Positions 1 to 13,980 of a stretch of 64,000 nucleotides of DNA are shown here, in pieces. How positions within the stretch are numbered: the first letter of the stretch is position 1; each line of letters opens with the position of its first letter. The stretch covers positions 1 to 64,000 of IMG/VR virus record IMGVR_UViG_3300022935_000005; one strand, written 5' to 3'. The position numbers and the translations under genes are program-made. Under the pieces are notes generated by a model. It was not told where the DNA came from, did not search any database, and saw nothing but the letters and a program-made list of their open reading frames with translations.

Positions 1-278
1 TTTCGGAGACGCGCGTTTCCTCCAGTTCTCGCGTAGAGTTCCCCACTATTCACTTTGCCCCTCTGTACACGAGAGACTTGGTCGCCCCGCTGCTGATCGC
101 GTTTTTGTTCCCGCTTTCTCGGCCCAACTCCCCGCCAGAACACAAGAGAACACATGGGCTCTCCGACTATACAAAACTCCACGAGCCGCCTCTGTACACT
201 TTCCACGACAGCGCGCGCAGCGAGGAATCGAGAGGGCTTTTCCCCGGGGCTGAAGTGAAAAAAAGTTCCGCCGATTCA

Positions 279-330
279 TGAACACTCGGACCGCGGCGTC
301 TATAATCTAAATGTTGGTAGGGAATACCAA
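279..330 (+). promoter_or_regulatory. Early promoter (TGAACA-N16-TATAAT) with 5' hairpin
   Basis: TGAACA 279-284, TATAAT 301-306, TTGGTA/TACCAA stem 314-330; same architecture as later early promoters. Confidence 0.7.
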
Positions 331-361
331 ACGCATGCTGAGAAAAAAGGAGAAAGCATAC

Positions 362-589
362 ATGAATTATGAGAAGCAGTATCAGACTAGTCGCTTCACT
401 TTCGGAGTGAACCGTAACACCACGAGCAAGCAGGCCGGCAGCAATGTCGTCACAATCGCGACGAACGCGGGGGATGGATTCTACTCCACGCCGACCACGC
501 AGCTCTCCATGACTGTAAAGGAAGCCCGCGCTCTTCAGGGTTTCCTTAACTCGACTCTCGGAACTAACGACACCGCGGTCAACAGTTAG
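362..589 (+). CDS. Hypothetical early protein (75 aa)
   Basis: AAGGAG SD before ATG 362; lies between a promoter and a terminator. Confidence 0.8.
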   Translation: MNYEKQYQTSRFTFGVNRNTTSKQAGSNVVTIATNAGDGFYSTPTTQLSMTVKEARALQGFLNSTLGTNDTAVNS

Positions 590-626
590 GATCAAGCTCT
601 CACCAGCAGGTGACGGGAAACTCCGG

Positions 627-661
627 GCCGGCGGCTCATTACGGGTCGCCGGCTTTTTTTT
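627..661 (+). terminator. Rho-independent terminator
   Basis: GCCGGCGGC/GTCGCCGGC stem followed by a T8 run. Confidence 0.85.
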
Positions 662-683
662 GTAATCTTCTAGGGAGGTGTGT

Positions 684-767
684 ATGAGAGGTATCGACGT
701 CACAGAAGTCATCGGCATTGCTGCGGTGCTGGCGTTTATCGTCTTCGCGATTGTTGTCACGGCATAA
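684..767 (+). CDS. 27-aa single-TM peptide (MRGIDVTEVIGIAAVLAFIVFAIVVTA)
   Basis: GGAGGT SD, ATG 684, TAA 765-767; translated by hand, below ORF-track cutoff. Confidence 0.65.
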   Translation: MRGIDVTEVIGIAAVLAFIVFAIVVTA

Positions 768-788
768 AACAAAAAAAAGAGAAAAAAG

Positions 789-845
789 CGTGCAAAGCGC
801 CGGCGGTTTGTGGTATAATATTGATGTTGGTCGGGGTAGACCAAC
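789..845 (+). promoter_or_regulatory. Early promoter CGTGCAAA..TGTGGTATAAT plus 5' hairpin
   Basis: CGTGCAAA 789, TATAAT 814, GTTGGTC/GACCAAC stem 826-845. Confidence 0.85.
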
Positions 846-857
846 AAAGGAGACCGC

Positions 858-1088
858 ATGCCCACCGCCGAATACAACACCGCTTTCGCCGCCCAGCTCG
901 GCGACACCCGCCGGGACCTGGCCATTATGGGTTGCGTTGTCGAGGAACAGCGCTTCCAGATCATCCGTGACGGAGCGTTCCTGACCATGACCGAGCTTGA
1001 GTATGTCGACGCCGACGGCATGACCACCCAGCTCCTGTTCGCGGGTACCGGTGACGGCGCTCCCCTTGAACGGTTCAAGCGTTTCTGA
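858..1088 (+). CDS. Hypothetical early protein
   Basis: AAGGAG SD, directly after the promoter. Confidence 0.8.
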   Translation: MPTAEYNTAFAAQLGDTRRDLAIMGCVVEEQRFQIIRDGAFLTMTELEYVDADGMTTQLLFAGTGDGAPLERFKRF

Positions 1089-1096
1089 GATTGACC

Positions 1097-1192
1097 ATGA
1101 AGACAAATACCGATATCATCATTGGCGCGCTGTTGAAGGGCGTCATCATCATGTGTGTTGTTAAGCTCTTGATTGGAGGTGTCCATGTTTGA
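1097..1192 (+). CDS. 31-aa hydrophobic peptide
   Basis: Hand translation MKTNTDIIIGALLKGVIIMCVVKLLIGGVHV; fills the gap and overlaps the next start. Confidence 0.5.
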   Translation: MKTNTDIIIGALLKGVIIMCVVKLLIGGVHV

Positions 1193-1334
1193 TGTTCAGT
1201 TGCGGGCCGTGCACCCCAAGCTGGGTGAGGGAATTGTCCGGCCGCTCAACGGTATGTACTGCGGTCGAGTCCTTGTCGAGTTTGAGGGGTTCGTCCGGTG
1301 GGTAGAGATTGATGACTTGGAATTTCTTGACTGA
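1185..1334 (+). CDS. 49-aa SH3/Tudor-like protein
   Basis: GGAGGT SD; MFDVQLRAVHPKLGEGIV...VLVEFEG (HPxxGxGxV motif); not in ORF track. Confidence 0.75.
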   Translation: MFDVQLRAVHPKLGEGIVRPLNGMYCGRVLVEFEGFVRWVEIDDLEFLD

Positions 1335-1343
1335 GAGGTAGAC

Positions 1344-1544
1344 ATGTTTGCCGGCGATCTCGTTGCACACTGGAACTGGGGTACGGGTCTTGTCCTTAAT
1401 GCTGCACCCACCCGGGAAGAGGTTCCAGAGGAGTGGCAGCACGACTGGCAGAGCGTTGTCCTTGTCCAGTTTCCTGAGTGGCACAACGCATGTGTGTGGG
1501 TCCTTGCCGCCTTCCTTGACCCGATCACCGACGAGTGTGAATAA
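1344..1544 (+). CDS. Small SH3/Tudor-like protein
   Basis: GAGG SD; GDLVAHWNWGTGLV...VLVQF. Confidence 0.75.
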   Translation: MFAGDLVAHWNWGTGLVLNAAPTREEVPEEWQHDWQSVVLVQFPEWHNACVWVLAAFLDPITDECE

Positions 1545-1556
1545 ACTTCAGATAAT

Positions 1557-1615
1557 CGTGCAAAGTACCAGCCCTCTATGGTATAATCTAGATGTTGGTC
1601 GGGGTAACTCGGCAA
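1557..1615 (+). promoter_or_regulatory. Early promoter plus 5' hairpin
   Basis: CGTGCAAA 1557, TGGTATAAT (TATAAT 1582), GTTGGTCGGGGTA leader. Confidence 0.85.
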
Positions 1616-1625
1616 AGGAGAGCGA

Positions 1626-1862
1626 ATGAAGGTCGGCACTGTCACCATCCCGGACTGGGCACCCGAGACTCTGGCCACTGTCCGCGAGGACCTCACCATT
1701 GCCGATGTGGCCTGGGTTGAAAAGCAGTGGTGCGACGTCGACGACGAGAACCGGATGCGGTGGATGACCGAGGTCCTTGTCCCCATGGGACCGTGGGACG
1801 ATCTCAAGTTCTGGTTCGAGGGCCGGGGCGCTGACGCTCGGCTTGTGTGGGCCAACTTCTAG
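1626..1862 (+). CDS. Hypothetical early protein
   Basis: AAGGAG SD; high GC3 codon usage. Confidence 0.8.
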   Translation: MKVGTVTIPDWAPETLATVREDLTIADVAWVEKQWCDVDDENRMRWMTEVLVPMGPWDDLKFWFEGRGADARLVWANF

Positions 1863-1887
1863 AGACACTGACTGAGAGGGAGAGATA

Positions 1888-2076
1888 ATGGGAAAGCACC
1901 TTTACCGCTGGAACTGGAACGAGGGTGGATACAACCAGTGCTACGCCGATACGAAGGCTCAGGCACGGAAGCTGGGTAACGCCATTGTGCCCGGTAAGCT
2001 GACCATCGACGAGAAGACTTTCCGACGGGTGAAGAACCAGGATCGCTTCTGGAAGAACTACCCCATCTTTGATTAA
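1888..2076 (+). CDS. Hypothetical early protein
   Basis: GAGGGAG SD; 62-aa ORF. Confidence 0.75.
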   Translation: MGKHLYRWNWNEGGYNQCYADTKAQARKLGNAIVPGKLTIDEKTFRRVKNQDRFWKNYPIFD

Positions 2077-2085
2077 GGAATCTAT

Positions 2086-2241
2086 TCGGGAGCCAGTAAG
2101 GCCGCGCCCACGGTAACGCTGGAGAGTTAGAGCACAGGGATGGGCGTCCCTGGCGAGCGGACTGGGTCTGCACGGATCGCATCGAAAGCCGCAGGGTGAG
2201 TAGGCACCGTTTCTGTGGGTTCGAATCCCACCTCCCGCACC
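2086..2241 (+). ncRNA. tRNA-like structured RNA (~155 nt) with canonical T-arm and acceptor stem but expanded interior
   Basis: T-arm GTGGG-TTCGAAT-CCCAC 2215-2231; CTCCCG 2232-2237 pairs with CGGGAG 2087-2092; several internal helices. Confidence 0.6.
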
Positions 2242-2280
2242 CTTTGTTTTTGCCAATAAAATCAACAGCTTGGAGAGCAC

Positions 2281-2445
2281 ATGTGGCGTGAAATTGCAGA
2301 CCTGATTCGTGAGCGTTACGAGGAGCAGACCCGAGACCCCGATGAGGACATCATTGTCTGGGGCGATGAGTATTGGGAGGAGCCGCATTACGGCTTTGAT
2401 GCAGAGTACGATCCTCCAGAGTTTGATGTCGACATGCCGTTCTAA
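2281..2445 (+). CDS. 54-aa acidic peptide ending DVDMPF (SSB-tail-like)
   Basis: GGAG SD; hand translation, 19/54 residues D/E; not in ORF track. Confidence 0.75.
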   Translation: MWREIADLIRERYEEQTRDPDEDIIVWGDEYWEEPHYGFDAEYDPPEFDVDMPF

Positions 2446-2480
2446 AATAATCACAAAAAAATAAAATAATTTTGTACATT

Positions 2481-2510
2481 CGTGCAAAGGGCTGACCACT
2501 GTGGTATAAT
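2481..2510 (+). promoter_or_regulatory. Early promoter
   Basis: CGTGCAAA 2481, TGTGGTATAAT (TATAAT 2505), A-rich upstream. Confidence 0.85.
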
Positions 2511-2555
2511 CATAATGTAAGCAAGGTTGGTTAATAAGGAACACGGAGGTTCAGC

Positions 2556-2975
2556 ATGGCAAAGGTAGGATTCGGTAAGGGCGACATCGTTAAGGTTCGG
2601 GACGACGCGTTCGGCGACCGCTGGGACAACACGGTACGGGACTATGTGCCGGAGACTACCGTCCGCGCCAAGTACTACTACACTGCTGCTGACAAGGAGC
2701 GTATGCGGGAAGAACGCCGGAAGGCAATCGCAGAGGCTCAGGCGGCGGGTGAAGACACGTTCGGTATGTGCTTTGATGATGCGGGTGAGCCGCGGTTGAT
2801 GGGTGATGATGGCATTACCTACCTCAAGAAGGGTATCGGATACCGAGTCCTCAGAGCTCGATGCCGTCAGAACTTCAACTACCACACCACTGGCGGCTGG
2901 ACAAAGCTCCTTGACCTTGACACGGGCCGGGAAGTCTTCATCAAGACTGAGAAGCTCGAGCGCGTGGAAGCCTAA
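2556..2975 (+). CDS. Hypothetical protein, possible SH3/KOW-like fold with insertion
   Basis: GGAGG SD; FGKGDIVKV at N-terminus, LLDLDTGREVFIK at C-terminus. Confidence 0.8.
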   Translation: MAKVGFGKGDIVKVRDDAFGDRWDNTVRDYVPETTVRAKYYYTAADKERMREERRKAIAEAQAAGEDTFGMCFDDAGEPRLMGDDGITYLKKGIGYRVLRARCRQNFNYHTTGGWTKLLDLDTGREVFIKTEKLERVEA

Positions 2976-3009
2976 AAAGTTTAATCATTTCAATCACTTG
3001 GGGGGTCTC

Positions 3010-3321
3010 ATGGAAAACGTAATCAAGATCAAGGTCGAACCTTATAACCCACGACGCTCTTATGGGTATCGCGACTACGATATGGAGTGCGGTTGTTGTC
3101 AGCGACCGATCCGGAACCGTGAGACTGCGACTGTGGTCGTGCGGCGCTCTTGTGATGAGCCTGGGTTTGCAGAGTTCCTTCCGATCCCAGAGCATGAGCT
3201 GCCTAACGATCCCGTTGAGTGGGGTACCTTCATCGGTAGTCACTGTGCGAAGGCTCTGCCAAAGACCCACAAGATCACTTACCGAAAGCTTTGGAAGAAC
3301 CACAGCGATACGTGGGTCTAA
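3010..3321 (+). CDS. Putative Zn-binding hypothetical protein
   Basis: CGCC...IGSHC; ATG 3010 after GGGGG. Confidence 0.75.
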   Translation: MENVIKIKVEPYNPRRSYGYRDYDMECGCCQRPIRNRETATVVVRRSCDEPGFAEFLPIPEHELPNDPVEWGTFIGSHCAKALPKTHKITYRKLWKNHSDTWV

Positions 3322-3375
3322 AAACACGCGTTACTCGGATCATAAAAAAATATAACTTGAATAACTCGTGAAAAT

Positions 3376-3442
3376 CGTGCAAATGTGACCCCCTCTGTGG
3401 TATTATATAAATGAAGGTGGGGAAAGGGTTTGAACCCCCGCC
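3376..3442 (+). promoter_or_regulatory. Early promoter plus 5' hairpin
   Basis: CGTGCAAA 3376, TGTGGTATTAT (TATTAT 3401), GGTGGGG/CCCCGCC stem 3416-3442. Confidence 0.85.
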
Positions 3443-3467
3443 ACAGTAAACGTCACAAGGAGACACC

Positions 3468-4268
3468 ATGAACCTCAAGACCTTCCGACTCCTCCAGCAG
3501 GAAAACCCCCACGCCGCGATGATCTTCGATCTCTCCGAGCGGTTCCCACGTGGACCGAAGGGTAAGCTCCGGAAGAAGCACTATCGTCGTGCGGATACGT
3601 GGTCCGACACTTGGGTCTCTGATGAACTGCTGGGTGGTGAGCTCGGCTACGACATCTTTGAGCTCTACAAGGTTGCCAAAGCCGGGATCGGTACGTGGGA
3701 GCTCGCTGATCTTTCAACGACAATCGAAGCAGCTGGTATGGGCTACCACCAGTATATGCCCTCCGCGGACGGAACGGAGAGAGTGTTTGTAAGCCGTAAG
3801 CTCTTCAAGGCCGGGGCTCAGAGTACTCGCCGTCTCAACCGACTGAACGAACGGTTCACTCAGGTGCGGAAGATGGTCGCCGAAAAGAGCAAGAAGAACC
3901 TCTACAACATCCGTATTGGTCATGAATCCAATGAGGTTGTGGTCTTCGGTGACAGCGAGCAGCACGCTCGGATGCAGTATGAAATGATGCTGAAGGCTGG
4001 TTTTGATGCCGGCACTCGTGCGGGATTCATCAACGCGGGCTGGGGTGAGCGTGATGAAGCGCCGATCCGAGTCGTGTACCGCGGACCGAGTCACGGTGTC
4101 CATGAGATCATGGCAGCCAACCAGGAGTACTCGAAGGGAATCGATGATGCCGTCAGCAAGATGGAGCTCCAGATCAAGCAGCTACAGGGCAAGATCGCTG
4201 CCGCTCGGGACATCCAGCAGATGGTCGATATGTTCACCCTTCAGTCCTGTGCCGCGGCGGCTGAATAA
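3468..4268 (+). CDS. Hypothetical protein with C-terminal coiled coil
   Basis: AAGGAG SD; 266 aa. Confidence 0.85.
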   Translation: MNLKTFRLLQQENPHAAMIFDLSERFPRGPKGKLRKKHYRRADTWSDTWVSDELLGGELGYDIFELYKVAKAGIGTWELADLSTTIEAAGMGYHQYMPSADGTERVFVSRKLFKAGAQSTRRLNRLNERFTQVRKMVAEKSKKNLYNIRIGHESNEVVVFGDSEQHARMQYEMMLKAGFDAGTRAGFINAGWGERDEAPIRVVYRGPSHGVHEIMAANQEYSKGIDDAVSKMELQIKQLQGKIAAARDIQQMVDMFTLQSCAAAAE

Positions 4269-4295
4269 GCCAACGATATCAACCACTTAGAAGTT

Positions 4296-4323
4296 TGTAC
4301 ATTTCACAAAGTTGAGGTATAAT
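4296..4323 (+). promoter_or_regulatory. Promoter TGTACA-N16-TATAAT
   Basis: Same spacing as sites at 279, 14520, 17045 and 36717. Confidence 0.6.
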
Positions 4324-4615
4324 GAAAATGAATGGTTTGGTAGAAGCGCTTAAGACCGGATGTCTTGTCTTGACTGATGATGAGTTGAACATCGCTTTCA
4401 AGATTCTGTCAGATGAGATGCTGGTTCGGCGGGAGAGACGAGAGGCAGCGACAAAGAGCAAGCTGTATCAAGGACAGGCTGTGAAGTTCTTTCATAGCGA
4501 GCAGGGAGACATCCACGGAACAATTCATAGGGTAAAGTACAAGAAGGCATTGGTCAAGGATCTCAATAGTGGTGTGGTTTGGGATGTTCCATTCCACATG
4601 CTAACGATCGTTTAG
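4322..4615 (+). CDS. Hypothetical protein, C-terminal SH3-like barrel
   Basis: LYQGQAVKF...GTIHRV...ALVKD...WDVP; true start probably 4328 because 4322 overlaps the -10. Confidence 0.75.
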   Translation: MKMNGLVEALKTGCLVLTDDELNIAFKILSDEMLVRRERREAATKSKLYQGQAVKFFHSEQGDIHGTIHRVKYKKALVKDLNSGVVWDVPFHMLTIV

Positions 4616-4651
4616 TTTGAGTTGATCACCAAGATTACGAAGGAGACGGTG

Positions 4652-4846
4652 ATGGATAAGAACAAGAAGTACAGTCATAACAACCCCAACCCCCACCTCG
4701 ACCCAGATATGCGAGACTACGTTATGGACCTCTGGTTCCGTGGTGTCGATCCAGAAGCTATTTCTCGAATGGTCCGACGCAAGATCGCTCGAGAGCGTGG
4801 GTATGAAAACAGTAAGCGCGAAAAGAATGACAAAAATGTTGCATAA
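4652..4846 (+). CDS. Small basic hypothetical protein (possible HTH)
   Basis: AAGGAG SD at ~4640; VMDLWFRGVDPEAISRMV. Confidence 0.65.
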   Translation: MDKNKKYSHNNPNPHLDPDMRDYVMDLWFRGVDPEAISRMVRRKIARERGYENSKREKNDKNVA

Positions 4847-4857
4847 GTTTTGACAAT

Positions 4858-4923
4858 CGTGCAAACAGCATAGGAACTGTGGTATTATTTATATGTTGGT
4901 GGGGATAAGGAATGGCCGCCAAC
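4858..4923 (+). promoter_or_regulatory. Early promoter plus 5' hairpin
   Basis: CGTGCAAA 4858, TGTGGTATTAT (TATTAT 4883), GTTGGTGG/CCGCCAAC stem 4895-4923. Confidence 0.85.
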
Positions 4924-4948
4924 GTTAACCCAACCAAGGAGAGTTCAC

Positions 4949-6034
4949 ATGGACATCAAGACCATCAAGACCATCGTTCCCAACCTTCCCGCCAACATTG
5001 CTGTTCTCATGCGAGGACCGACAGGTGTGGGTAAGTCTCACGTAGCCCGGGCTTTCGCTGATGAGCTCGGTCTGCCCTTCATCGATGTCCGTGGTTCCAC
5101 CATGGATGAGGCGAAGGTCGGTGGTCTGCCGGATATGCGGGCTGTCGATGAGAAGAAGGTTGCCACCTTCGTGGTCCCTAGCTGGTTCAAGACCGCTTGT
5201 GACCGCCCCTGTGTCATCATGCTGGACGAGCTTAACCGCTCCATGCCGACCGTGATGCAGGCCTTCTTCCAGATTGTCCTGGACCGTGAGCTCGGTAACG
5301 ATGAGGACGGTGTCCCCTACCGACTCCACCCGGAAACCCGGGTCATCGCGGCCATCAACGCCGGTAACGAGTACGACGTCAACGAGATGGACCCCGCTCT
5401 GCTCCGCCGCTTCTGGGTCTGCGATGTTGAGCCCACAGTGGCTGACTGGACCGATTGGGCTGCCGGTGCTGGTGTGGACAAGGTCATGGTCGAGTTCATC
5501 AAGCAGGAGCCTGCGCACTGGCGTGTTGACCCGGCCTCGGTTGAGCCCGGTACGGTTGTCCCGACTCCGGCCAGCTGGCACCGTCTCAGCGACTCGCTGG
5601 TTCACATGGGTCTGGCACCGGAGAAGCTGGCTGGTAACGATGTTCCGGCTCACTTCTACCCCGTCCTGACTGGGTTCGTCGGAGTTGAGGCAGCTATTGC
5701 CTTCCGCGACTTCGTCAAGAACTACGAGCTCCAGATCACCGCTGAAGACATCCTCGAGGGTAAGATCAAGGCTGCAGACATCAAGGATGCTCCTGCTAGC
5801 CAGCTCGCCTCGGTGGTTGAGAAGATCACGGCTCACGCCGCGGACAACAACTGGAAGCCGGCTCAGGTGAAGCGGATTGCCAAGTTCGCGGAAGAGGTTG
5901 GTGGTGAGTTCCTCATCCAGGTCTTCACCGGAGTTCAGAAGGCAGGGAACATGAAGAACCTGCTGCCCCTGAACCAGGCCATCGGCATGAAGGTGGTCGA
6001 GCTGGTTAACGCCGCTCGCGCTACTCAGAAGTAA
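4949..6034 (+). CDS. MoxR-like AAA+ ATPase (AAA_5 type)
   Basis: Walker A GPTGVGKS, Walker B IMLDELNR, sensor AAIN, MDPALLRRF. Confidence 0.9.
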   Translation: MDIKTIKTIVPNLPANIAVLMRGPTGVGKSHVARAFADELGLPFIDVRGSTMDEAKVGGLPDMRAVDEKKVATFVVPSWFKTACDRPCVIMLDELNRSMPTVMQAFFQIVLDRELGNDEDGVPYRLHPETRVIAAINAGNEYDVNEMDPALLRRFWVCDVEPTVADWTDWAAGAGVDKVMVEFIKQEPAHWRVDPASVEPGTVVPTPASWHRLSDSLVHMGLAPEKLAGNDVPAHFYPVLTGFVGVEAAIAFRDFVKNYELQITAEDILEGKIKAADIKDAPASQLASVVEKITAHAADNNWKPAQVKRIAKFAEEVGGEFLIQVFTGVQKAGNMKNLLPLNQAIGMKVVELVNAARATQK

Positions 6035-6051
6035 ACGGGAGTTTGCTCCCT

Positions 6052-6094
6052 AAGGGGGACCGGGGTTTTTGGGTTAACTCGGTCCCCCTTCTTT
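6052..6094 (+). terminator. Rho-independent terminator
   Basis: AAGGGGGACCGGG/CTCGGTCCCCCTT stem followed by CTTT. Confidence 0.75.
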
Positions 6095-6124
6095 ATACAA
6101 TCCTCTATAGACAGGAGGTAACCC

Positions 6125-6331
6125 GTGGCCGAAAAGAAAGTAACTCTTAACGAGATGATCGCTCAGATTCGAGAGTGGCATACTGAAGCTCTTAACATGC
6201 GTAACGATGGATGGACACAGCAGGCTTTTAAGGATCGACTAGAGTTCCTACATGCCCGTATGACAGCTGTGGTAGAGTCAATCAACCCTCCTCAGACGGC
6301 GCCGACAGAGAATAATAACGACAAAGAGTAG
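6125..6331 (+). CDS. Hypothetical protein
   Basis: AGGAGG SD, GTG start. Confidence 0.75.
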   Translation: MAEKKVTLNEMIAQIREWHTEALNMRNDGWTQQAFKDRLEFLHARMTAVVESINPPQTAPTENNNDKE

Positions 6332-6336
6332 ACATT

Positions 6337-6401
6337 CGTGCAATAGTGCTTTAACCTGTGGTATTATATAAATGATGGTGGGGAAGGAATAGAGCTTCTC
6401 C
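6337..6401 (+). promoter_or_regulatory. Early promoter plus 5' hairpin
   Basis: CGTGCAAT 6337, TGTGGTATTAT (TATTAT 6362), GGGGAAG/CTTCTCC stem 6380-6401. Confidence 0.85.
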
Positions 6402-6420
6402 CAAAACTACAGGAGTCCAC

Positions 6421-7821
6421 ATGGCAGACAAGACGACCGCAACAGACGCTCCCTTTGAGCACGCCTCTGAAGAGGTAGCCAAGGCATTTGACCTTCAGCC
6501 TCACCTCGTTGGTATGATGCTGGAGGAGCCGTTCTACACTAAGGTCCTTCGAATCCTGACCAAGACCCGGACTCGGAAGATCCCGACCGCCGGAGTTATT
6601 GCGAAGGACGGGGACCTGCAGATGTACTGGAACGACCGGTTCATGGCGGCTCTGCCCGGTAAGCAGATTCGGGGAGTCCTCAAGCATGAGATGCTCCACC
6701 TCATCCTCGAACACACCACCACTCGTAAGTACGAGCCTCACAAGGTTTGGAACTACGCCACTGACTTGGCGATCAACAGCCACCTCATGGACGAGCTTCC
6801 TGAGTTTGGTCTCTTCCCGGGTAAGGCGTTTAAGCCGCTGACTGAGGAACAACAGGAGCGAATGGGTGAGGCAGCTGTCAAGCAGTACGAGGCAGTGTCC
6901 AAGAAGATTGAAAGCTTCCCAGCTGGGCAGGCTGCTGAGTGGTACTTCGCGCGGCTCATGGAAGATGATGAAGTCAAGGAAGCCATTGAGAACCCGAAGC
7001 AGAACGGTAAGAGTCTGGCTGATGCTCTCCGCGATGGTGATGTGACCATCAACGAGAACGGTCAGATTTGTGATGCTGACGGTAACCCTCTCCCCACTGT
7101 CCCTGGTACGCTGGATGACCATGACGGCTGGGGCGAAATGAGCGATGAAGACCGTGAGTACATCAAGGCCAAGGTCAAGCAGGCTGCTGGTGACGCTGCC
7201 AAGGAGTGCGACCAGAAGGGTAGCTGGGGTTCGGTACCTGCAGAACTGCGGAAGCAGATCAAGGCAGCACTGGTCAACGAAGTTCCCTGGCAGAAGATCC
7301 TTGACCGCTTCTGTGGTTACAGCCGACGGGCCAACCGGACCACGAGCTACAGCCGCCTTCACAGCACCATGGGTCGTTTGGTTCCCGGTGCCAAGCGTGG
7401 GTACACGAGCTCGGTGGCAGCTTACATTGACCAGTCCGGCTCAGTCAGCGATCGTGAGCTGGCCCTCTGCTTCGGCGAGCTGGCTAACCTGGCCAAGAAC
7501 ACTGAGTTCACCTGCTACCACTTCGACACCGAGGTGGATGAGAAGAGCAAGACGGTATGGAAGCGTAAGGGTCACCCTGCCAACCGGACTCGCTGCGGTG
7601 GTACGGACTTCGCTGCTCCGACCGAGCACGCTGGAAAGCACAAGCGGGAGTTCGACGGGTACATCATCCTGACCGACGGCTACGCTCCTGACCCGGGTCC
7701 GAGCCGGTTGCCCCGAGCTTGGGTGGTTACCCCTGACGGAGCAGTTCAGGACTGGATGTTCAACTACAAGAAGGACGTCATCGTAAAGATGACTTGGCCA
7801 AAGAGTCTGCAGGAGGCGTAA
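6421..7821 (+). CDS. DUF2201-family protein: HExxH metallopeptidase-like domain plus vWA-like domain
   Basis: HEMLH, WNYATDLAIN, MIDAS DQSGS, GGTDF, ILTDG. Confidence 0.9.
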   Translation: MADKTTATDAPFEHASEEVAKAFDLQPHLVGMMLEEPFYTKVLRILTKTRTRKIPTAGVIAKDGDLQMYWNDRFMAALPGKQIRGVLKHEMLHLILEHTTTRKYEPHKVWNYATDLAINSHLMDELPEFGLFPGKAFKPLTEEQQERMGEAAVKQYEAVSKKIESFPAGQAAEWYFARLMEDDEVKEAIENPKQNGKSLADALRDGDVTINENGQICDADGNPLPTVPGTLDDHDGWGEMSDEDREYIKAKVKQAAGDAAKECDQKGSWGSVPAELRKQIKAALVNEVPWQKILDRFCGYSRRANRTTSYSRLHSTMGRLVPGAKRGYTSSVAAYIDQSGSVSDRELALCFGELANLAKNTEFTCYHFDTEVDEKSKTVWKRKGHPANRTRCGGTDFAAPTEHAGKHKREFDGYIILTDGYAPDPGPSRLPRAWVVTPDGAVQDWMFNYKKDVIVKMTWPKSLQEA

Positions 7822-8129
7822 TGAAGTTTAAGAAGGCAAATGAACGAGTGGAATGTGCTGATGGATTCTCCATGAGTGTACAGGCAAGTGAACGCAGCTA
7901 CTGTACTCCACGTGACGACCAGGGACCCTATACTGCGGTAGAGGTAGGTTTCCCCTCCTCATATGATTACTACCTCCACGAATACGCTGAGACCCCGGAG
8001 GATCCAACGGGGACAGTATACGGTTGGGTACCAGCTGATACAGTTATGATGTGTATTGAAGCACATGGCGGCATGATCAGTGGAGAGCTTCCGCCGCTAG
8101 TAAAAACAGATTTTGAGAGCATCACATGA
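7821..8129 (+). CDS. Conserved phage hypothetical protein
   Basis: GGAGG SD; CADGFSMSVQAS...VEVGFPS...VYGWVP. Confidence 0.8.
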   Translation: MKFKKANERVECADGFSMSVQASERSYCTPRDDQGPYTAVEVGFPSSYDYYLHEYAETPEDPTGTVYGWVPADTVMMCIEAHGGMISGELPPLVKTDFESIT

Positions 8130-8470
8130 AAGTAGACGAAGAAAAAGTAGACATTGCCAGAATGTTCTGGATAGAGGACTGGGACAAGATGTCTGCCTTT
8201 GATACAGATATAGAGAACGTAGAGTGGCACGTCACAAACTGCATGACGTATCTCATCCAGCTCAGCGAAGAAGTGGTACCTCTATACAAGCCTCCGCCGA
8301 ACATAGAGCTAGAGGGAGACTGGAACGAGAGAGAGATGCTGACTCTATATAGAGACCTGCTTGAAGCGGCAGAGCGTCGGGGGTACGAACCAGATGCCGG
8401 GATGATCACCCGGATTCGGAAAGCTCTACCCCCGAAGCGTGTCCGGGTCCGGAGAGTTGTTCGGCCTTGA
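8126..8470 (+). CDS. Hypothetical protein
   Basis: ATGA overlap with upstream gene. Confidence 0.7.
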   Translation: MKVDEEKVDIARMFWIEDWDKMSAFDTDIENVEWHVTNCMTYLIQLSEEVVPLYKPPPNIELEGDWNEREMLTLYRDLLEAAERRGYEPDAGMITRIRKALPPKRVRVRRVVRP

Positions 8471-8475
8471 GTTCC

Positions 8476-8750
8476 TGTATAGAGGGGGGCTGGTAAACAG
8501 GCCTGGTAAAATGTACAGAGGGGCCCCACTCCGAGCGAGAAAAAGTGGCCCAGATGGCCCCATCGGGGGCCCCTGAAAACAGGCCCCTTTTGGCCCCTTC
8601 TGGTGGCCCCCTGGAGCCTACTCAGTGGGCCTTTCTGGAGGGCATATGCCTAAGCGCGGTAAAAAATTTTTTCGGAGCGATTTTGAAAACCAAAAGCCCA
8701 AAATCCCAAAAAAAATTCTCGGGAAATTTTGAAAACGAAAAGGGTACCCC
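8476..8750. repeat. Non-coding GGCCC repeat cluster followed by A/T tracts
   Basis: GGCCC at 8522, 8547, 8556, 8568, 8582, 8592, 8605; then AAAAAATTTTTT and repeated A-tracts. Confidence 0.7.
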
Positions 8751-8796
8751 AAGAGAGAGACTCAACGCGGTACTAAAGAAAACGAAAGAAGAGCAC

Positions 8797-9036
8797 ATGA
8801 ACAATCTCCACATCATTGCCAACTATCTATTCGATAACCCAGGAGCGCGGTACACGGATGTCACAAAGCACTTGTGCCAGGAGCGCGGAAAGGTATGGAG
8901 CAAAGGGCACTATACTCGGTACTTCACCAACCCGATCTACAGCTCAGGTCGCCGGTACGCTCACCACCTCTGGTGCAAGACCCCATGCGGTGGATGGATG
9001 TTGACATTGGAAGGATATGGATATGTCCGCAAGTAA
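8797..9036 (+). CDS. Hypothetical protein (possible winged helix)
   Basis: MNNLHIIANYLFDNPGARYTDV; ORF-track extension to 8545 spans the repeat DNA and is probably spurious. Confidence 0.7.
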   Translation: MNNLHIIANYLFDNPGARYTDVTKHLCQERGKVWSKGHYTRYFTNPIYSSGRRYAHHLWCKTPCGGWMLTLEGYGYVRK

Positions 9037-9298
9037 GCTCATAGAGGTCGGAGATCTGGTCCGGTGGGGCTGGCCCCGCTTCCACAGCGATTCTCGCGTG
9101 GGAATCGTGACGCGAGTAGATATCAAACCTCGAGGCGCCGGATTCAGAGTGCCCAACCCGCGAGTCCGCTATGTTGTGCAGTGGTTCTACCCAGATGGAC
9201 AACCCAGCATCACTCAAGAGCACGTCTTCAACAATGAGATAACACGAGTCACAGAGGATCGAAATCCATGGCAAGACAAAACAGAGACTTCAAAGTAG
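9017..9298 (+). CDS. Small SH3/KOW-like protein
   Basis: IEVGDLVRW...GIVTRV...YVVQWF. Confidence 0.8.
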   Translation: MDMSASKLIEVGDLVRWGWPRFHSDSRVGIVTRVDIKPRGAGFRVPNPRVRYVVQWFYPDGQPSITQEHVFNNEITRVTEDRNPWQDKTETSK

Positions 9299-9534
9299 GA
9301 GACATTGTCCAGTGGGCTCCACCGATCGGCGGCGCCAACTCCGGTCACGTCTTTAGAGATGCAGTGGGTCTTATTGTAGGTGTCAAGTACCCAGACCCCG
9401 ACTCACAGCGTAACGAATGGGCAGACCCTCACATGTGGTACACAGTCCAGTGGTTCAGAGACGGCATTGCATCGGGTCGACCAGATCACATCGTTGAACA
9501 CCACATTCAGAGAGTTCGAGATGACGCACCATAG
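9268..9534 (+). CDS. Small SH3/KOW-like protein
   Basis: FKVGDIVQW...GLIVGV...YTVQWF. Confidence 0.8.
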   Translation: MARQNRDFKVGDIVQWAPPIGGANSGHVFRDAVGLIVGVKYPDPDSQRNEWADPHMWYTVQWFRDGIASGRPDHIVEHHIQRVRDDAP

Positions 9535-9817
9535 CAAGCTCAGCATCGGCGCGGGAGACACAGTGGTCCGGGTTCATGAGCAGGAAGACACCGATCCCTA
9601 CCCAGGACTCGTTATCAGGCGGGTAGAACCTCGTGAACTCTTGAGTATGGTGTTTGGAGAGGGAGATGACTTCGAAATGGGGGAAGCTCTATGGATGCGA
9701 GATGCAGCATCTGGTCTAGAGGAGTATTCGGGTGAATGGGTCCGCTATGAAGTCCTTTGGCCGGATGGTCGGTTCTCGATCGAATCGATCGCCCAAATCA
9801 GGAAGGCATATTCGTGA
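9521..9817 (+). CDS. Small SH3/KOW-like protein
   Basis: IGAGDTVVRV...GLVIRR...YEVLWPDG. Confidence 0.75.
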   Translation: MTHHSKLSIGAGDTVVRVHEQEDTDPYPGLVIRRVEPRELLSMVFGEGDDFEMGEALWMRDAASGLEEYSGEWVRYEVLWPDGRFSIESIAQIRKAYS

Positions 9818-10017
9818 TCGGTGTGGGAGACATTGTCTGCGTTGACGGAGATCTACTGGGTACAGCAATGGGACTCGGTCTTGTTACCCGGGTTTGTGAG
9901 TCTCGCTTTTCTAATTCATGTACTCGGTTTGTAGACGTCCTCTGGGCCTCGGGTGATATGTTCAAGGATGTTGATATGAACGTGCTGTTGCTTGTGCATT
10001 CTGCCGGCAGCCCGTGA
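9814..10017 (+). CDS. Small SH3/KOW-like protein
   Basis: GTGA overlap; IGVGDIVCV...GLVTRV...VDVLWASG. Confidence 0.75.
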   Translation: MIGVGDIVCVDGDLLGTAMGLGLVTRVCESRFSNSCTRFVDVLWASGDMFKDVDMNVLLLVHSAGSP

Positions 10018-10039
10018 CCTGCTAGTATACTTAAATGTT

Positions 10040-10276
10040 ATGGACACCGACTCACGCTATTCTGATGTTATCATTGGCTCACTTGTTGACCATCCGGTCT
10101 ACGGCCCGGGGCTGATCACTGCTGTCACGACCGAACCCGCATTTGCGACGCGCCAAAGCACGCATCGTCCCGATTACATCATTGTCTGTAGCGTCCTATG
10201 GAACACGGGTGAGTTGCAAACTGGCTGGCCCGCCAACCGGCTCGTCGATTACCTTGTGTTAACGTCGATTATCTAG
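10040..10276 (+). CDS. Small SH3/Tudor-like protein
   Basis: IGSLVDHPVYGPGLITAV...SVLWNTG; TATACTTA 6 nt upstream of ATG. Confidence 0.75.
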   Translation: MDTDSRYSDVIIGSLVDHPVYGPGLITAVTTEPAFATRQSTHRPDYIIVCSVLWNTGELQTGWPANRLVDYLVLTSII

Positions 10277-10293
10277 AGCGTATACTTAACGAT

Positions 10294-10575
10294 ATGGCAA
10301 AGGAAACTGTATTCTCCCCGCGCGGTGCTCTGCACCGGAACCTTGTTGGGTGCATCATCGTTCATCCGCACTTGGGTCACGGGCTCGTCACGAGCACGGA
10401 TCGCTACTGGACTGAAGTCCGGCAACAGCGACGTCAAGTCTGGACTGTTCTCTGGTCTGAGACCGGTACCGCTGAAGATGTTGACGAACGCATCATGCAA
10501 CACTGCATGATCATTGACGACGGAGACGGCGCTAAAGAGTGGGGTTCATGGGCCGAGGTTGTAGGTCACAAGTGA
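10294..10575 (+). CDS. Small SH3/Tudor-like protein
   Basis: VGCIIVHPHLGHGLVTS...WTVLWSETG; TATACTTA 5 nt upstream of ATG. Confidence 0.75.
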   Translation: MAKETVFSPRGALHRNLVGCIIVHPHLGHGLVTSTDRYWTEVRQQRRQVWTVLWSETGTAEDVDERIMQHCMIIDDGDGAKEWGSWAEVVGHK

Positions 10576-10611
10576 CCCTCTGAGACCCGCGGTCTCGAGA
10601 CATGATTGAGT

Positions 10612-10890
10612 CTAAGGTCGGCGAGTCCCGGGACGACTGGAGATGACTCTGAAGCGTGCCTTGGCACGGAGCTTCTCACCTGTTCGCGGGTGAGTCAAGT
10701 CAATTTCTCCCTTGAGTTCCGAGTCTCTATCTGGATCTGACATCATGATTCTGGATATCTGCGCCTGTATTTCACTCATTTGCTTTTTGAGCGCCTTGTC
10801 AATTGTGATGACGCTCCGCACTACGAAGGCAAGTCCCCCGGTGATCATGATGGCAATAGCATAGACCGTTAATTCAAAACCCATATCCAT
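10612..10890 (-). CDS. Membrane-anchored coiled-coil hypothetical protein (92 aa)
   Basis: AAAGGA SD before MDMGFELTVYAIAIM; N-terminal TM helix. Confidence 0.7.
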   Translation of the reverse strand: MDMGFELTVYAIAIMITGGLAFVVRSVITIDKALKKQMSEIQAQISRIMMSDPDRDSELKGEIDLTHPRTGEKLRAKARFRVISSRPGTRRP

Positions 10891-11360
10891 AGGGTATCCT
10901 TTCACAACCGATCTACCTTTAAGTATGGTGACTGGATGTATTGTGATTTCTCTTGGAGTGCGATCCGAGCAAGAAGGCACGCCTTCGGCGCGAGGATGCA
11001 CCCATGAAACGCAAAAAGTGGGTGTGCCGAAAACGCGTCCCGCGTTATTCACTGTTTCCAAAAAAACGCGTGTGTCCGGCGCCGACGCGCCGATAAATGA
11101 GAAAACCCACTTCACTCTCCGGCGGTGCCATTGTATGAGGGTGGGAAAGGTAACAACGTGGGTTTGACTATTATAATAGAGCTGTAATCGTTGAGGAGGA
11201 GGCGGATGGGTCGTGTTGGAGCGAATCAAGAAGATCAACAAGACGTTCGCTGTAATATCTATAATAGTTGCTGTCTGGTTGCACATGTACGTAAAATCAA
11301 TCAAGCAACAGAGCGATGATGCTGTATATTTAGAAAAACAACCAGGATGGAGAAATCAAA

Positions 11361-11726
11361 ATGTCCAACAAAATCAATGCAACCCAGTTGAGAAATCTGA
11401 TCATGGAAGTGCTAAATGAAGAAGCACACGAAGAAGGCGAGCACAATGAGCTAGACGAGATGGACGCTGCCATGCCCATGCCAAAGGGCGATGCTGAGCG
11501 ACTACCTGTCGGCACTCGTGTTACGCACCCTGAATGGGGCGCCGGTGAAGTCGTCGGTCATGGAGACCATGAGTTCGATCACCTTGTTCGATGGGACAAG
11601 CTTCCTAACCGCGATCGTCTTGCTCACAGATTCCAGCTTATTCCTGAGAGCGTTGGTAATGATGATTTGAATGAGTCAGCTGACCTTGCACGTTGGCGTA
11701 AGCTAGCAGGCATTCTAGTAGATTGA
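11361..11726 (+). CDS. Leader-motif protein with Tudor-like domain
   Basis: KINATQLRNLIMEVLNE; LPVGTRVTHPEWGAGEVVG; C-terminal LARWRKLAGI. Confidence 0.85.
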   Translation: MSNKINATQLRNLIMEVLNEEAHEEGEHNELDEMDAAMPMPKGDAERLPVGTRVTHPEWGAGEVVGHGDHEFDHLVRWDKLPNRDRLAHRFQLIPESVGNDDLNESADLARWRKLAGILVD

Positions 11727-11977
11727 TGGTCTCGTCTTTCTATTGCGTCTGGTACAAAGATGCCAGTGTCAATAAGGAGACGTGCGTCGGAGCATGCTCT
11801 ACTTGGGATGAGGCAAGAAGTCTCGCTGGGCGCCTCTACACGGTAAAGAAAAAGATAGACGATTCAGAAAATCTCTCTACTGGTATTTTTCTCTTCTCTC
11901 CCGGCGAACTTTATACAGCGCGATCTCCCAAAAGGTGGCAGATAATGCCGCTGCTGACCAGCAATACACAGCCTTAG
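11726..11977 (+). CDS. Hypothetical protein
   Basis: TGATG coupling to upstream gene. Confidence 0.65.
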   Translation: MVSSFYCVWYKDASVNKETCVGACSTWDEARSLAGRLYTVKKKIDDSENLSTGIFLFSPGELYTARSPKRWQIMPLLTSNTQP

Positions 11978-12019
11978 ATTATATTTACTATTAGTATCTA
12001 CGCACGGGAGATTTTTTAT

Positions 12020-12975: not shown

Positions 12976-13395
12976 ATGAAGATCACAAGAACACAGATTA
13001 GAAATATTCTACAAGAAGCAATGGGTCAAGATGGAGTGTTTCCTGATCTAAGCCACCCTCTGATTGCTCCCTATGCTGACAAAATGCAGGGTCCTATTAA
13101 GGGCCGAGAAGGTAAGTGGTTCGTAGAATACCAGAGCTACAAGTACAATGCTGGTGGTCAAAGCGATCAAGGTATTACTGTATACCTCCTCCCTGATGGT
13201 AAATACACTGCTCGAGTTGGGGGTAACTTTAACAATACGATCTCTGGTCGTATAGGGAAGGATTTTGACGATCCAGAAAGTGCTATCGAAGCTGCCCTTA
13301 ACTCAGGCCCTTCAGCTACCGGCCCAACAGCCGCAGAGCTTCTCAAGAAGGTCGGCGAAAAAGTCTCCACTCGCGGATACATAGGACAGGATTAA
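12976..13395 (+). CDS. Leader-motif protein
   Basis: MKITRTQIRNILQEA. Confidence 0.85.
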   Translation: MKITRTQIRNILQEAMGQDGVFPDLSHPLIAPYADKMQGPIKGREGKWFVEYQSYKYNAGGQSDQGITVYLLPDGKYTARVGGNFNNTISGRIGKDFDDPESAIEAALNSGPSATGPTAAELLKKVGEKVSTRGYIGQD

Positions 13396-13398
13396 ATC

Positions 13399-13668
13399 AT
13401 GAAAATCACCAAGAGACAACTTAGAAGAATCATCAAAGAATCGTTCGACGAATTTGGTATGAGTGAGTACGGTCTTTACAACGATGCTGGATCGTCAGTA
13501 GAAGCAGAGTTTGACGCATTGCTTGACGAAGTTGCCTTGTTTATGAGTGATGCAAGAAAAAGGCTAAATGCCCTAATGGAGAAACACTCGGACGTCGGGG
13601 CTTCTGATAGTGAAGCGGTCGATTTGATAAGCGCAGCTTTTGAAGACGCAAAGTCTGGCATGCGATAG
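13399..13668 (+). CDS. Leader-motif protein, acidic
   Basis: MKITKRQLRRIIKES. Confidence 0.85.
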   Translation: MKITKRQLRRIIKESFDEFGMSEYGLYNDAGSSVEAEFDALLDEVALFMSDARKRLNALMEKHSDVGASDSEAVDLISAAFEDAKSGMR

Positions 13669-13677
13669 GGAGAAATC

Positions 13678-13980
13678 ATGAAGATCACAAAACAACAACT
13701 TAGAAGAATTATCTCAGAGCAGCTTACACTAGATGATCTTGTGGTTGGACCTGAACAGCCTCGACAACTCGGTTACGGTGAAGGTGAGGGTCGCATGTCA
13801 AAATCTCAACTTGACAAGATCGCTCGTTATTCTCAATCACTGCATGATAAACTGCTTGACGATGATGATCTACCAGAATGGGTACAATCAAAGATCGCTG
13901 TCGCTGCAGATAACATCGGTAAAGTATACCACTATCTTGATTACAAAATTAGACGTATGGAACAAGGAGATGAATCATGA
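13678..13980 (+). CDS. Leader-motif protein with helical domain
   Basis: MKITKQQLRRIISEQ; LPEWVQSKIAVA. Confidence 0.85.
   Translation: MKITKQQLRRIISEQLTLDDLVVGPEQPRQLGYGEGEGRMSKSQLDKIARYSQSLHDKLLDDDDLPEWVQSKIAVAADNIGKVYHYLDYKIRRMEQGDES

What the first reader, a model, noticed from the sequence alone, without database searches (positions are those of the whole stretch)
1185..11726. Expanded family of stand-alone SH3/Tudor-like barrels, several with the UvrD/PcrA C-terminal HPxxGxG signature
Seen: at least 9 short ORFs share G-[D/S/C/T]-x-V...G-[L/I/E]-[V/I]...V-x-[W/F]: 1185, 1344, a tandem run of six (9017, 9268, 9521, 9814, 10040, 10294), and 11361; 2556 and 4322 match more weakly. Four carry HPxxGxG (HPKLGEG, HPVYGPG, HPHLGHG, HPEWGAG) and one has HWNWGTG. 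Established: the PcrA/UvrD C-terminal Tudor-like domain (HxxFGxG) and the CarD/Mfd RID are small barrels that bind RNA polymerase. Inference: a diversified paralog array of RNAP-, ribosome- or defence-protein-binding decoys for host takeover, with a shared scaffold and variable loops.
Basis: partly seen in the sequence, partly recalled or inferred. Interest (0 to 1): 0.75.

Follow-up and report, generated by a model that had tools for sequence, protein, structure and literature searches.

The report
Expanded small beta-barrel proteins in phage
A 281-kb salt-marsh jumbo phage carries at least two dozen tiny, fast-evolving SH3/Tudor-like barrel proteins, five of which resemble the domain that bacterial repair helicases use to grip RNA polymerase. 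Their fold and family are now supported, but what they bind is still untested.

Summary
The nine short + strand ORFs exist at the stated coordinates. They are conserved as ORFs in related phages with pN below pS. The shared motif is about 19 times more frequent than chance. HPxxGxG occurs four times in the whole 281-kb genome, and all four are in these ORFs.

AlphaFold models of o10294 (pLDDT 77) and o9017 (pLDDT 83) give the same five-strand SH3/Tudor-like barrel. For o10294 the best solved-structure matches are Mfd-RID, CarD/CdnL and the PcrA/UvrD C-terminal Tudor domain. o9017 matches generic Tudor, KOW and HspQ barrels.

Profile comparisons link the four HPxxGxG ORFs to genuine PcrA_UvrD_tudor repeats (84-94% probability over short alignments). 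None reaches a Pfam cut-off.

The family is larger than reported. A decoy-controlled HMM finds 21 members in this genome, 15 of them outside the window, and 78 in the genome plus fetched loci.

ORFs 2556 and 4322 are not supported as members.

The array sits in a hot spot whose copy number differs between relatives. Binding to RNA polymerase or any other host target remains inference; the one co-fold attempt gave no answer.

Verdict: a real, lineage-specific expansion of a known fold, with function unproven.

The parts
1185..1334 (+). o1185, 49 aa, minimal Tudor-like barrel with HPKLGEG. It is the most UvrD-CTD-like of the set in sequence.
   Evidence: Orthologs at 80-86% identity exist in other metagenomes. 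Its family profile's two best PDB hits are the E. coli UvrD C-terminal Tudor domain (E 0.13 and 0.17, 32 aligned columns). hhalign gives 93.5% to a profile of genuine Tudor repeats. GGAGG lies upstream of the ATG. The fold itself was not modelled.
1344..1544 (+). o1344, 66 aa, barrel with GDLVAHWNWGTGLV.
   Evidence: Orthologs at 69-81% identity. Pfam PcrA_UvrD_tudor gives E 0.029 and 14.7 bits against a cut-off of 23.9. It is the third-best non-seed hit of the group-B profile (E 0.028). It was taken into the decoy-free iterated HMM.
9017..9298 (+). o9017, 93 aa, first gene of the tandem array, GDxV type, basic (pI 9.3).
   Evidence: AlphaFold pLDDT 82.7 with five strands. Foldseek and VIA matches are HspQ, Tudor, KOW, PsaE/NdhS and YorP. 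The L044 ortholog is 65% identical with pN 0.23 and pS 0.71. It is a paralog of o9268 (phmmer 3e-5, hhalign 96%).
9268..9534 (+). o9268, 88 aa, GDxV type, paralog of o9017.
   Evidence: Searches show the pairing with o9017. The ESM Atlas model (pLDDT 0.63) neighbours viral hypothetical proteins, YccV-like, Hva1_TUDOR and NusG-KOW. No relative beyond near-identical copies was found by the word-indexed search.
9521..9817 (+). o9521, 98 aa, barrel with a long acidic insert between strands. It is the weakest member by sequence.
   Evidence: The L044 ortholog is 33% identical with pN 0.45 and pS 0.59. The ESM Atlas model (pLDDT 0.61) neighbours Tudor/SH3 families: BAHCC1 Tudor, DUF1918, DUF4537 and DUF4314. 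There is no significant hhalign or HMM link to the others.
9814..10017 (+). o9814, 67 aa, GTG start overlapping the previous stop. It bridges the GDxV and HPxxGxG groups.
   Evidence: It is the best non-seed hit of the group-B profile (E 0.0022). hhalign to the o10294 family is 85% over 41 columns. Orthologs in L044 and L042 fix the start. pN is 0.39 and pS 0.68.
10040..10276 (+). o10040, 78 aa, HPVYGPG, paralog of o10294.
   Evidence: hhalign to the o10294 family is 97%. hhalign to the Tudor-repeat profile is 91.5%. Orthologs are P0007, L042 and L044. It shares the upstream GTATACTTAA with o10294.
10294..10575 (+). o10294, 93 aa, HPHLGHG. It belongs to a small metagenomic family that starts M[AP]KETV and keeps HPxxGxGL[IV]T...W invariant.
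11361..11726 (+). o11361, 121 aa. An N-terminal helix (QLRNLIMEVLNEE) and acidic linker are followed by a Tudor-like barrel (residues 48-95, nt 11502-11645, VGTRVTHPEWGAGEVV) and a C-terminal RWRKLAGILVD.
   Evidence: Orthologs in L044, L002 and L001 keep both ends but lack the barrel. PF21196 scores E 0.015 in the own-genome scan. hhalign to the Tudor-repeat profile is 92.7%. GGAG lies upstream.
8797..9036 (+). Conserved 79-aa protein that marks the upstream border of the array hot spot. It is not a barrel.
   Evidence: It is 63-68% identical in L001 and L002 and sits directly upstream of their arrays.
10612..10890 (-). Conserved 92-aa membrane protein on the opposite strand. It marks the downstream border of the array.
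   Evidence: Homologous - strand ORFs follow the array in L001 (8913-9191), L002 (13976-14242) and L044 (3297-3572).

Best explanation
These are real genes for stand-alone, mostly acidic, 50-120-residue SH3/Tudor-like five-strand barrels. They form a lineage-specific expansion in a salt-marsh jumbo phage: at least 21-24 copies, six of them in one tandem array that lies in a gene-turnover hot spot. The conserved positions are core and turn residues (hGDhV in strand 1, GhGhV in strand 2, hxVhW in strand 3, LEVI at the end). The loops between strands vary from about 5 to 30 residues.

The most likely reading is that each copy is a small protein-binding module with its own loop-defined target. Five copies (1185, 1344, 10040, 10294, 11361) carry the strand 1-2 hairpin signature of the PcrA/UvrD C-terminal Tudor domain. 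These most likely dock on the beta subunit of the host RNA polymerase by edge-strand pairing, as the CarD and Mfd barrels do (the PcrA/UvrD barrel binds RNA polymerase through a conserved surface). There they would compete with host factors or retune the polymerase that the phage, which has its own sigma factor but no polymerase, must take over.

Shown: the genes, the family, the fold, and the likeness to RNA-polymerase-interacting Tudor domains.
Inferred: protein binding, RNA polymerase as a target, and the effect on the host.
For: Genes:
- The ORFs are conserved in the same order in relative L044 with pN below pS.
- Orthologs of 1185 and 1344 exist in other metagenomes.
- 75 of 78 HMM members lie on the coding strand.

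Family:
- The motif is enriched about 19-fold over shuffles.
- Iterated HMM searches met zero reversed-sequence decoys.
- The 39-sequence alignment shows the conserved core and variable loops.

Fold: AlphaFold models of o10294 and o9017 have the same strand order.

Likeness to RNA-polymerase binders:
- Foldseek top hits for o10294 are Mfd RID, CarD/CdnL and PcrA/UvrD CTD, and ESM Atlas neighbours agree.
- The group-B profile hits multi-repeat proteins that pass the Pfam cut-offs for PcrA_UvrD_tudor and CarD_TRCF_RID.
- hhalign to those repeats is 84-94% for the four HPxxGxG ORFs and below 2% for the GDxV ORFs.
- The o1185 profile's best PDB hits are the UvrD CTD.
- In PcrA, H681 and W684 of this hairpin were among the conserved surface residues mutated, and CTD point mutations greatly reduce RNA polymerase binding (PMC5397179). 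The His is invariant in the o10294 family. The Trp position is kept in 11361 and 1344.

Context:
- The phage encodes a sigma-70-family protein and no RNA polymerase.
- 19 of 24 members have pI below 6, which argues against general nucleic-acid binding.
Against: - No window ORF reaches the Pfam cut-off for PcrA_UvrD_tudor (best 14.7 bits against 23.9). None matches CarD_TRCF_RID, DUF3553 or Hva1_TUDOR.
- The hhalign matches to Tudor repeats are short (13-26 columns) and driven by the hairpin motif.
- The PcrA W684 position is not conserved in the o10294 family. The PcrA K712 equivalent could not be placed.
- The co-fold with E. coli RpoB 1-520 gave no answer, and the host is unknown.
- The GDxV members show no preference for RNA-polymerase binders.
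- Metatranscriptome libraries hold pieces of the region, but this does not prove transcription.
Confidence: 0.5

Rival explanations
1. The barrels are anti-defence or other decoy binders. Each fast-evolving copy would neutralise a different host immunity or stress protein, not RNA polymerase, in the way many small early phage proteins and SH3-like antitoxins act.
For: Divergence is very fast: 33-65% identity between relatives, against 57-73% for the neighbouring genes in the same comparison; the MoxR ATPase is 88-89% identical between the window and L001/L002, whose o10294 orthologs are 34-42%. Copy number turns over inside a hot spot bounded by conserved genes. The members are acidic. The VapX antitoxin appears among the fold matches.
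Against: There is no match in PHROGs or Pfam to any known anti-defence family. PADLOC was not scanned. Nothing links any copy to a particular defence system. This reading does not explain the PcrA/UvrD-type hairpin.
Confidence: 0.17
2. The barrels bind nucleic acid (KOW, Sm, Cren7 or YccV style). They would act as regulators or chaperones of phage RNA or DNA.
For: Fold matches include NusG and Spt5 KOW domains, the HspQ/YccV hemimethylated-DNA-binding fold and ribosomal SH3-like proteins. o9017 is basic, with pI 9.3.
Against: 19 of 24 members have pI below 6 and many carry net charges of -9 to -12. No KOW or YccV Pfam match appeared even at E up to 1.
Confidence: 0.13
3. The barrels are virion or assembly accessories, either packaged in the head or helping the MoxR-vWA chaperone pair next to the array.
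For: ESM Atlas neighbours of o9017 include phage prohead proteases fused to Hva1_TUDOR barrels. The array lies 1.2 kb downstream of a MoxR AAA+ / peptidase-vWA pair that has been proposed to aid virion assembly in jumbo phages (PMC7824862). o11361 carries a degenerate form of the N-terminal MKITKxQLRRIIKE tag, which resembles a capsid targeting signal.
Against: Only o11361 has that tag. The other copies start directly with the barrel. The structural module lies elsewhere, from about 30 to 60 kb. Rapid sequence turnover is unusual for assembly factors.
Confidence: 0.1
4. The similarity is a chance motif in spurious short ORFs.
For: The motif is degenerate. Several pairwise comparisons are not significant.
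Against: The motif and the HPxxGxG signature are far above shuffled expectation and absent from the - strand. The ORFs are conserved with pN below pS. AlphaFold models are confident. The HMM iterations met zero decoys.
Confidence: 0.02

Closest known systems
PcrA/UvrD C-terminal Tudor domain (Pfam PF21196; PDB 5DMA, 6YI2, 7EGS)
   Same: Both are five-strand barrels of about 50 residues. The strand 1-2 hairpin reads [VL]G.R..H..[WFLY]G.G.V in both. The His that was among the conserved surface residues mutated in PcrA (CTD point mutations greatly reduce RNA polymerase binding) is kept in all five ORFs. o1185 aligns over 32 columns to the E. coli UvrD CTD.
   Different: The phage proteins stand alone and are not the tail of an SF1 helicase. 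They score below the Pfam cut-off. The Trp/Phe position varies in three of the five. The conserved Lys of strand 4 could not be identified. o10294 and o10040 have longer loops and an extra N-terminal MAKETVF peptide.
CarD/CdnL N-terminal domain and Mfd RID (Pfam PF02559)
   Same: These are the best Foldseek PDB matches of the o10294 model (probability about 1, rmsd 2-3 A over 48-58 residues). They are also small barrels, and they bind the RNA polymerase beta1 lobe by strand pairing.
   Different: There is no sequence match in this genome. CarD carries a C-terminal DNA-contacting domain that is absent here.
DUF3553 and other stand-alone bacterial Tudor-like proteins
   Same: They are stand-alone small proteins with the same hairpin. 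An ESM Atlas cluster annotated with DUF3553 and PcrA_UvrD_tudor is a structural neighbour of o10294.
   Different: PF12073 finds nothing in this genome. Those proteins are single-copy bacterial genes, not phage arrays.
Uncharacterised small SH3-like phage proteins (BFVD and ESM Atlas clusters; B. subtilis SPbeta YorP, PDB 2HEQ; T-even Gp30.5)
   Same: They share the size, the fold, the viral origin and the lack of a known function.
   Different: No report of an expansion to two dozen copies in one genome, or of a PcrA-type subgroup, turned up in the literature searches.
Lineage-specific expansions of small domains in jumbo phages, such as about 35 zinc ribbons in Bacillus phage G (PMC7824862)
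   Same: One small domain is multiplied many times in a jumbo phage genome, with a suspected regulatory or conflict role.
   Different: The fold differs. Here the copies cluster near both ends of the assembled contig (positions 211-281 kb and 1-12 kb).

Membership tests
PcrA_UvrD_tudor (PF21196) | Score at or above the Pfam gathering cut-off (23.9 bits) | tested here: not met
   The best scores are o1344 at 14.7 bits (E 0.029) and o11361 at 14 bits in the own-genome scan (E 0.015). Only model positions 1-19 of 48 are matched.
PcrA_UvrD_tudor (PF21196) | Five-strand Tudor/SH3-like barrel of about 50 residues | tested here: met
PcrA_UvrD_tudor (PF21196) | Strand 1-2 hairpin H-x-x-[W/F]-G-x-G, containing the conserved surface residues H681 and W684 that were mutated in PcrA | tested here: inconclusive
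   His and G-x-G are present in all five ORFs and are invariant in the o10294 family. The aromatic position is W in 11361 and 1344, Y in 10040, and L in 1185 and 10294. hhalign to genuine repeats gives 84-94% for four ORFs and 15% for 1344. The residues mutated in PcrA come from PMC5397179.
PcrA_UvrD_tudor (PF21196) | Position at the C-terminus of an SF1 helicase | tested here: not met
   All copies are stand-alone ORFs of 49-121 residues.
PcrA_UvrD_tudor (PF21196) | Binds RNA polymerase beta | not testable with these tools
   Complex prediction of o10294 with E. coli RpoB 1-520 returned 'no answer'. The host is unknown.
CarD_TRCF_RID (PF02559) | Pfam cut-off (23 bits) | tested here: not met
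   There is no match in the genome at E up to 10. Two metagenomic relatives of o10294 reach only E 0.13.
CarD_TRCF_RID (PF02559) | Fold of the RNA-polymerase-interacting barrel | tested here: met
SH3-like / Tudor-like small barrel (fold level) | Five antiparallel strands forming a closed barrel | tested here: met
   o10294 and o9017 by AlphaFold. o9268 and o9521 by ESM Atlas models of moderate confidence. The others are assigned by sequence relation only.
One homologous family comprising all nine ORFs | Significant sequence or profile links between all members | tested here: inconclusive
   Firm links: 9017-9268, 10040-10294, 9814-10294. Moderate: 1344 and 11361 to group B, and 9017 by iterated HMM. 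None for 9521. 1185 is linked only through the Tudor-repeat profile.
KOW motif (PF00467), Hva1_TUDOR (PF11160), DUF3553 (PF12073) | Pfam match | tested here: not met
   No hits.

The most novel reading that the evidence does not exclude
The HPxxGxG barrels are phage-made mimics of the RNA-polymerase-docking domains of host UvrD/PcrA, Mfd or CarD. They would occupy those sites on the beta subunit and so shut off transcription-coupled repair or polymerase displacement while the phage sigma factor redirects the enzyme. One copy (o11361) would be delivered with the DNA as an ejected head protein. The remaining GDxV copies would form a loop-diversified binder repertoire aimed at other host machines.
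Probability: 0.15. Interest if true: 0.8.

Novelty: new variant of a known kind. Interest (0 to 1): 0.5.

Why it matters
Small ORFs of unknown function make up much of every large phage genome. Here one fold accounts for about two dozen of them, which turns a set of orphan genes into a family that can be tested. If the PcrA/UvrD-like copies do dock on RNA polymerase, they would be a new class of phage transcription modulators built by copying the host's own polymerase-recruitment domain. The array would also be a natural library of loop-diversified binders on a 50-residue scaffold.

Tried and rejected
- Megablast and tblastn against GenBank phages found no close relative and no homolog of o9017.
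- The word-indexed protein search with o9268 found only itself.
- Simple iterated HMMs seeded on 9017+9268, or on the four group-B sequences, did not grow in the small pool.
- PHROGs and Pfam have no family above threshold for any of the 24 genome members.
- Profiles A1 and A2, and the o11361 barrel alone, found no relevant hit among PDB sequences.
- The anchor-gene search found no further syntenic contigs beyond L001, L002 and a 99.95% identical strain, which carries no information on selection.
- The co-fold with E. coli RpoB gave no answer.
- Sigma-70-like promoter and terminator scans were not above chance.
- TATACTTAA is not a genome-wide motif. Its only exact + strand matches in the window lie upstream of 10040 and 10294 (one further exact match is on the - strand at 48179).
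- RNA-library contigs cover the region only patchily and cannot show transcription.
- Membership of 2556 and 4322 was considered and rejected for lack of any signal.

Full report
**Setting.** The window is the first 64 kb of a single 280,913-bp viral contig. IMG/VR classes it as linear, and CheckV estimates 92% completeness. It has a helicase, tail-fibre proteins and a baseplate protein. It encodes a sigma-70-family protein at 184,997-185,200 and no detectable RNA polymerase. The same DNA occurs in many salt-marsh metagenomes. No close relative exists among GenBank phages; the best helicase identity is 35%. The first 12 kb, where the finding lies, has 53-55% G+C against 40-47% for most of the genome.

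**Observation.** All nine ORFs are on the + strand at the stated coordinates. Most have a Shine-Dalgarno-like sequence upstream. Starts and stops overlap at 9268, 9521 and 9814 (GTGA), as expected for coupled phage genes.

Shuffles give 0.58 +/- 0.76. HP..G.G occurs four times in the whole genome, only in 1185, 10040, 10294 and 11361, against 0.36 expected. A looser form adds only 1344. So the pattern is real and not chance.

**Are they genes?** A 7.5-kb contig from another sample (L044) has the same six genes in the same order. Identities are 33-65%, and pN is below pS for every pair. Orthologs of 1185 (80-86%) and 1344 (69-81%) occur in other metagenomes. The o10294 type has about 15 small relatives among 1.84 billion representative proteins. 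Metatranscriptome libraries contain pieces of the region, but contaminating DNA cannot be excluded.

**Relations among the nine.**
- Firm pairs are 9017-9268 (phmmer 3e-5, hhalign 96%) and 10040-10294 (hhalign 97%; both hit the same orthologs).
- A profile of the o10294 family was searched against all 4,581 six-frame ORFs of the genome and related loci. After its own seeds it ranks 9814 (E 0.0022), 11361 (0.018) and 1344 (0.028) first.
- hhalign gives 85% for 9814 against the o10294 family.
- Iterating this profile with reversed sequences as decoys never admitted a decoy. It grew to 78 members, 21 of them in this genome: 1344, 9017, 9814, 10040, 10294, 11361 and 15 more at 211-280 kb. 75 of the 78 lie on the coding strand although 55% of the pool ORFs do not.
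- 9268 joins only through 9017. 9521 and 1185 are not reached. 2556 and 4322 show no signal.

The 39-sequence alignment shows what is shared: hGDhV, GhGhV, hxVhW and a terminal LEV[IV]. The loops between these elements vary widely in length.

**Fold.** AlphaFold with family alignments gives pLDDT 76.8 for o10294 and 82.7 for o9017. Both have five strands in the same order. ESM Atlas models of o9268 and o9521 (pLDDT about 0.6) neighbour Tudor, SH3, KOW and YccV families and many viral hypothetical proteins.

**Sequence link to PcrA/UvrD.**
- The o10294 profile hits four long metagenomic proteins made of six repeats (E 6e-9 to 6e-5). These proteins pass the Pfam cut-offs for PcrA_UvrD_tudor and, in two cases, CarD_TRCF_RID.
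- One of their repeats finds the UvrD and PcrA Tudor structures directly (E 0.008-0.014). This shows the canonical hairpin: VGDRANHRKWGIGTVV in PcrA and LGQRVRHAKFGEGTIV in UvrD.
- A profile of these repeats gives hhalign probabilities of 93.5% (1185), 92.7% (11361), 91.5% (10040) and 84.2% (10294). It gives 14.8% for 1344 and below 2% for the GDxV ORFs.
- The same repeat profile, run as an HMM, ranks the four HPxxGxG ORFs above every decoy.
- The o1185 family profile's two best hits in the whole PDB are the E. coli UvrD CTD (E 0.13 and 0.17, 32 columns).
- These alignments are short and centred on the hairpin.
- No window ORF reaches a Pfam cut-off.
- In PcrA, H681, W684, K712 and L714 were the conserved surface residues chosen for mutation, and point mutations in the CTD greatly reduce RNA polymerase binding (PMC5397179). 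The His is kept in all five ORFs. The Trp position is kept in only two. The Lys could not be placed.

**Locus dynamics.** The array lies between a conserved 79-residue protein (8797-9036) and a conserved - strand membrane protein (10612-10890). Between the same two anchors L044 has six barrels, L001 has five single barrels plus a two-barrel fusion (8382-8858), and L002 has two. The barrel genes are 33-65% identical between the window and L044, where the two neighbouring genes compared are 57-73%. Between the window and L001/L002 the MoxR ATPase is 88-89% identical but o10294 only 34-42%. 10040 and 10294 share the leader GTATACTTAA, which has no other exact + strand match in the window; this points to a tandem duplication that included the leader. 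o11361 is a conserved small acidic protein into which a barrel has been inserted in this phage only.

**Function (inference).**
- Most copies are acidic: median pI 4.9, and 19 of 24 are below 6. This speaks for protein partners rather than nucleic acid.
- A conserved core with variable loops suggests one scaffold with many specificities.
- The phage must use the host polymerase, and five copies look like the host's own polymerase-docking domain. RNA polymerase beta is therefore the most likely target for that subgroup.
- This was not tested. The co-fold with E. coli RpoB 1-520 returned no answer, which is not evidence either way, and the host is unknown.
- Rival readings are anti-defence binders, nucleic-acid binders and virion accessories. 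None is excluded.

**Comparison and novelty.** The fold and the PcrA/UvrD/CarD-type Tudor domain are known, and small uncharacterised barrels are common in phages. Expansions of small domains in jumbo phages have been described for other folds (PMC7824862). New here are the scale (about two dozen copies), the hot-spot array, and a stand-alone phage subgroup with the PcrA/UvrD hairpin. No paper describing this turned up. I rate it a new variant of a known kind, of moderate interest.

Noticed in passing
window 12976-13395, 13399-13668, 13678-13980 (degenerate forms at 11361 and 12020); genome 197228, 238299-241424, 277734-278295; L002 15155-18632: A second paralog family. At least 13 proteins begin with a near-invariant MKITK(R/N/S)QLRRIIKE and then differ completely. 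This resembles T4 internal proteins, which share only a capsid targeting sequence, so these may be packaged or ejected proteins.
   Followed up: partly
genome 211056-280093 (loci L048-L051), outside the window: Fifteen more small barrel genes of the same family, many starting MKVGDLV and ending EV[IL]NESR. The family clusters near both ends of the contig as assembled.
   Followed up: partly
window 4949-6034 and 6421-7821: A MoxR-type AAA+ ATPase followed by a protein with an HEMLH metallopeptidase motif and a vWA-like C-terminal half. This pair was described for group 2.2 jumbo phages as a possible assembly chaperone system.
   Followed up: partly
window 1-12000: G+C is 53-55% here against 40-47% for most of the genome. 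A second rise, to 52%, lies at about 235-240 kb. No explanation was sought.
   Followed up: no
window 640-3460: Relative to L001, the window has about 2.8 kb of extra small genes, including 1185 and 1344, between the homologs of 311-589 and 3468-4268. This is a second variable spot.
   Followed up: no
L001 8382-8858: A 158-residue protein with two barrel repeats in tandem, at the end of the L001 array.
   Followed up: no
proteins P0011, P0016, P0019, P0020 (metagenomic, about 500 aa): Proteins built of about six PcrA/UvrD-type Tudor repeats separated by low-complexity linkers, from an A+T-rich source. Their function is unknown.
   Followed up: no
genome 184997-185200: A sigma-70-family region 2 match (74 bits) in a 260-residue frame. 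No multisubunit or T7-like RNA polymerase was found.
   Followed up: partly
window 10294-10314 and relatives: The o10294 family keeps the N-terminal peptide M[AP]KETV[FYH] almost unchanged, although AlphaFold leaves it disordered. It may be a short binding or signal peptide.
   Followed up: no
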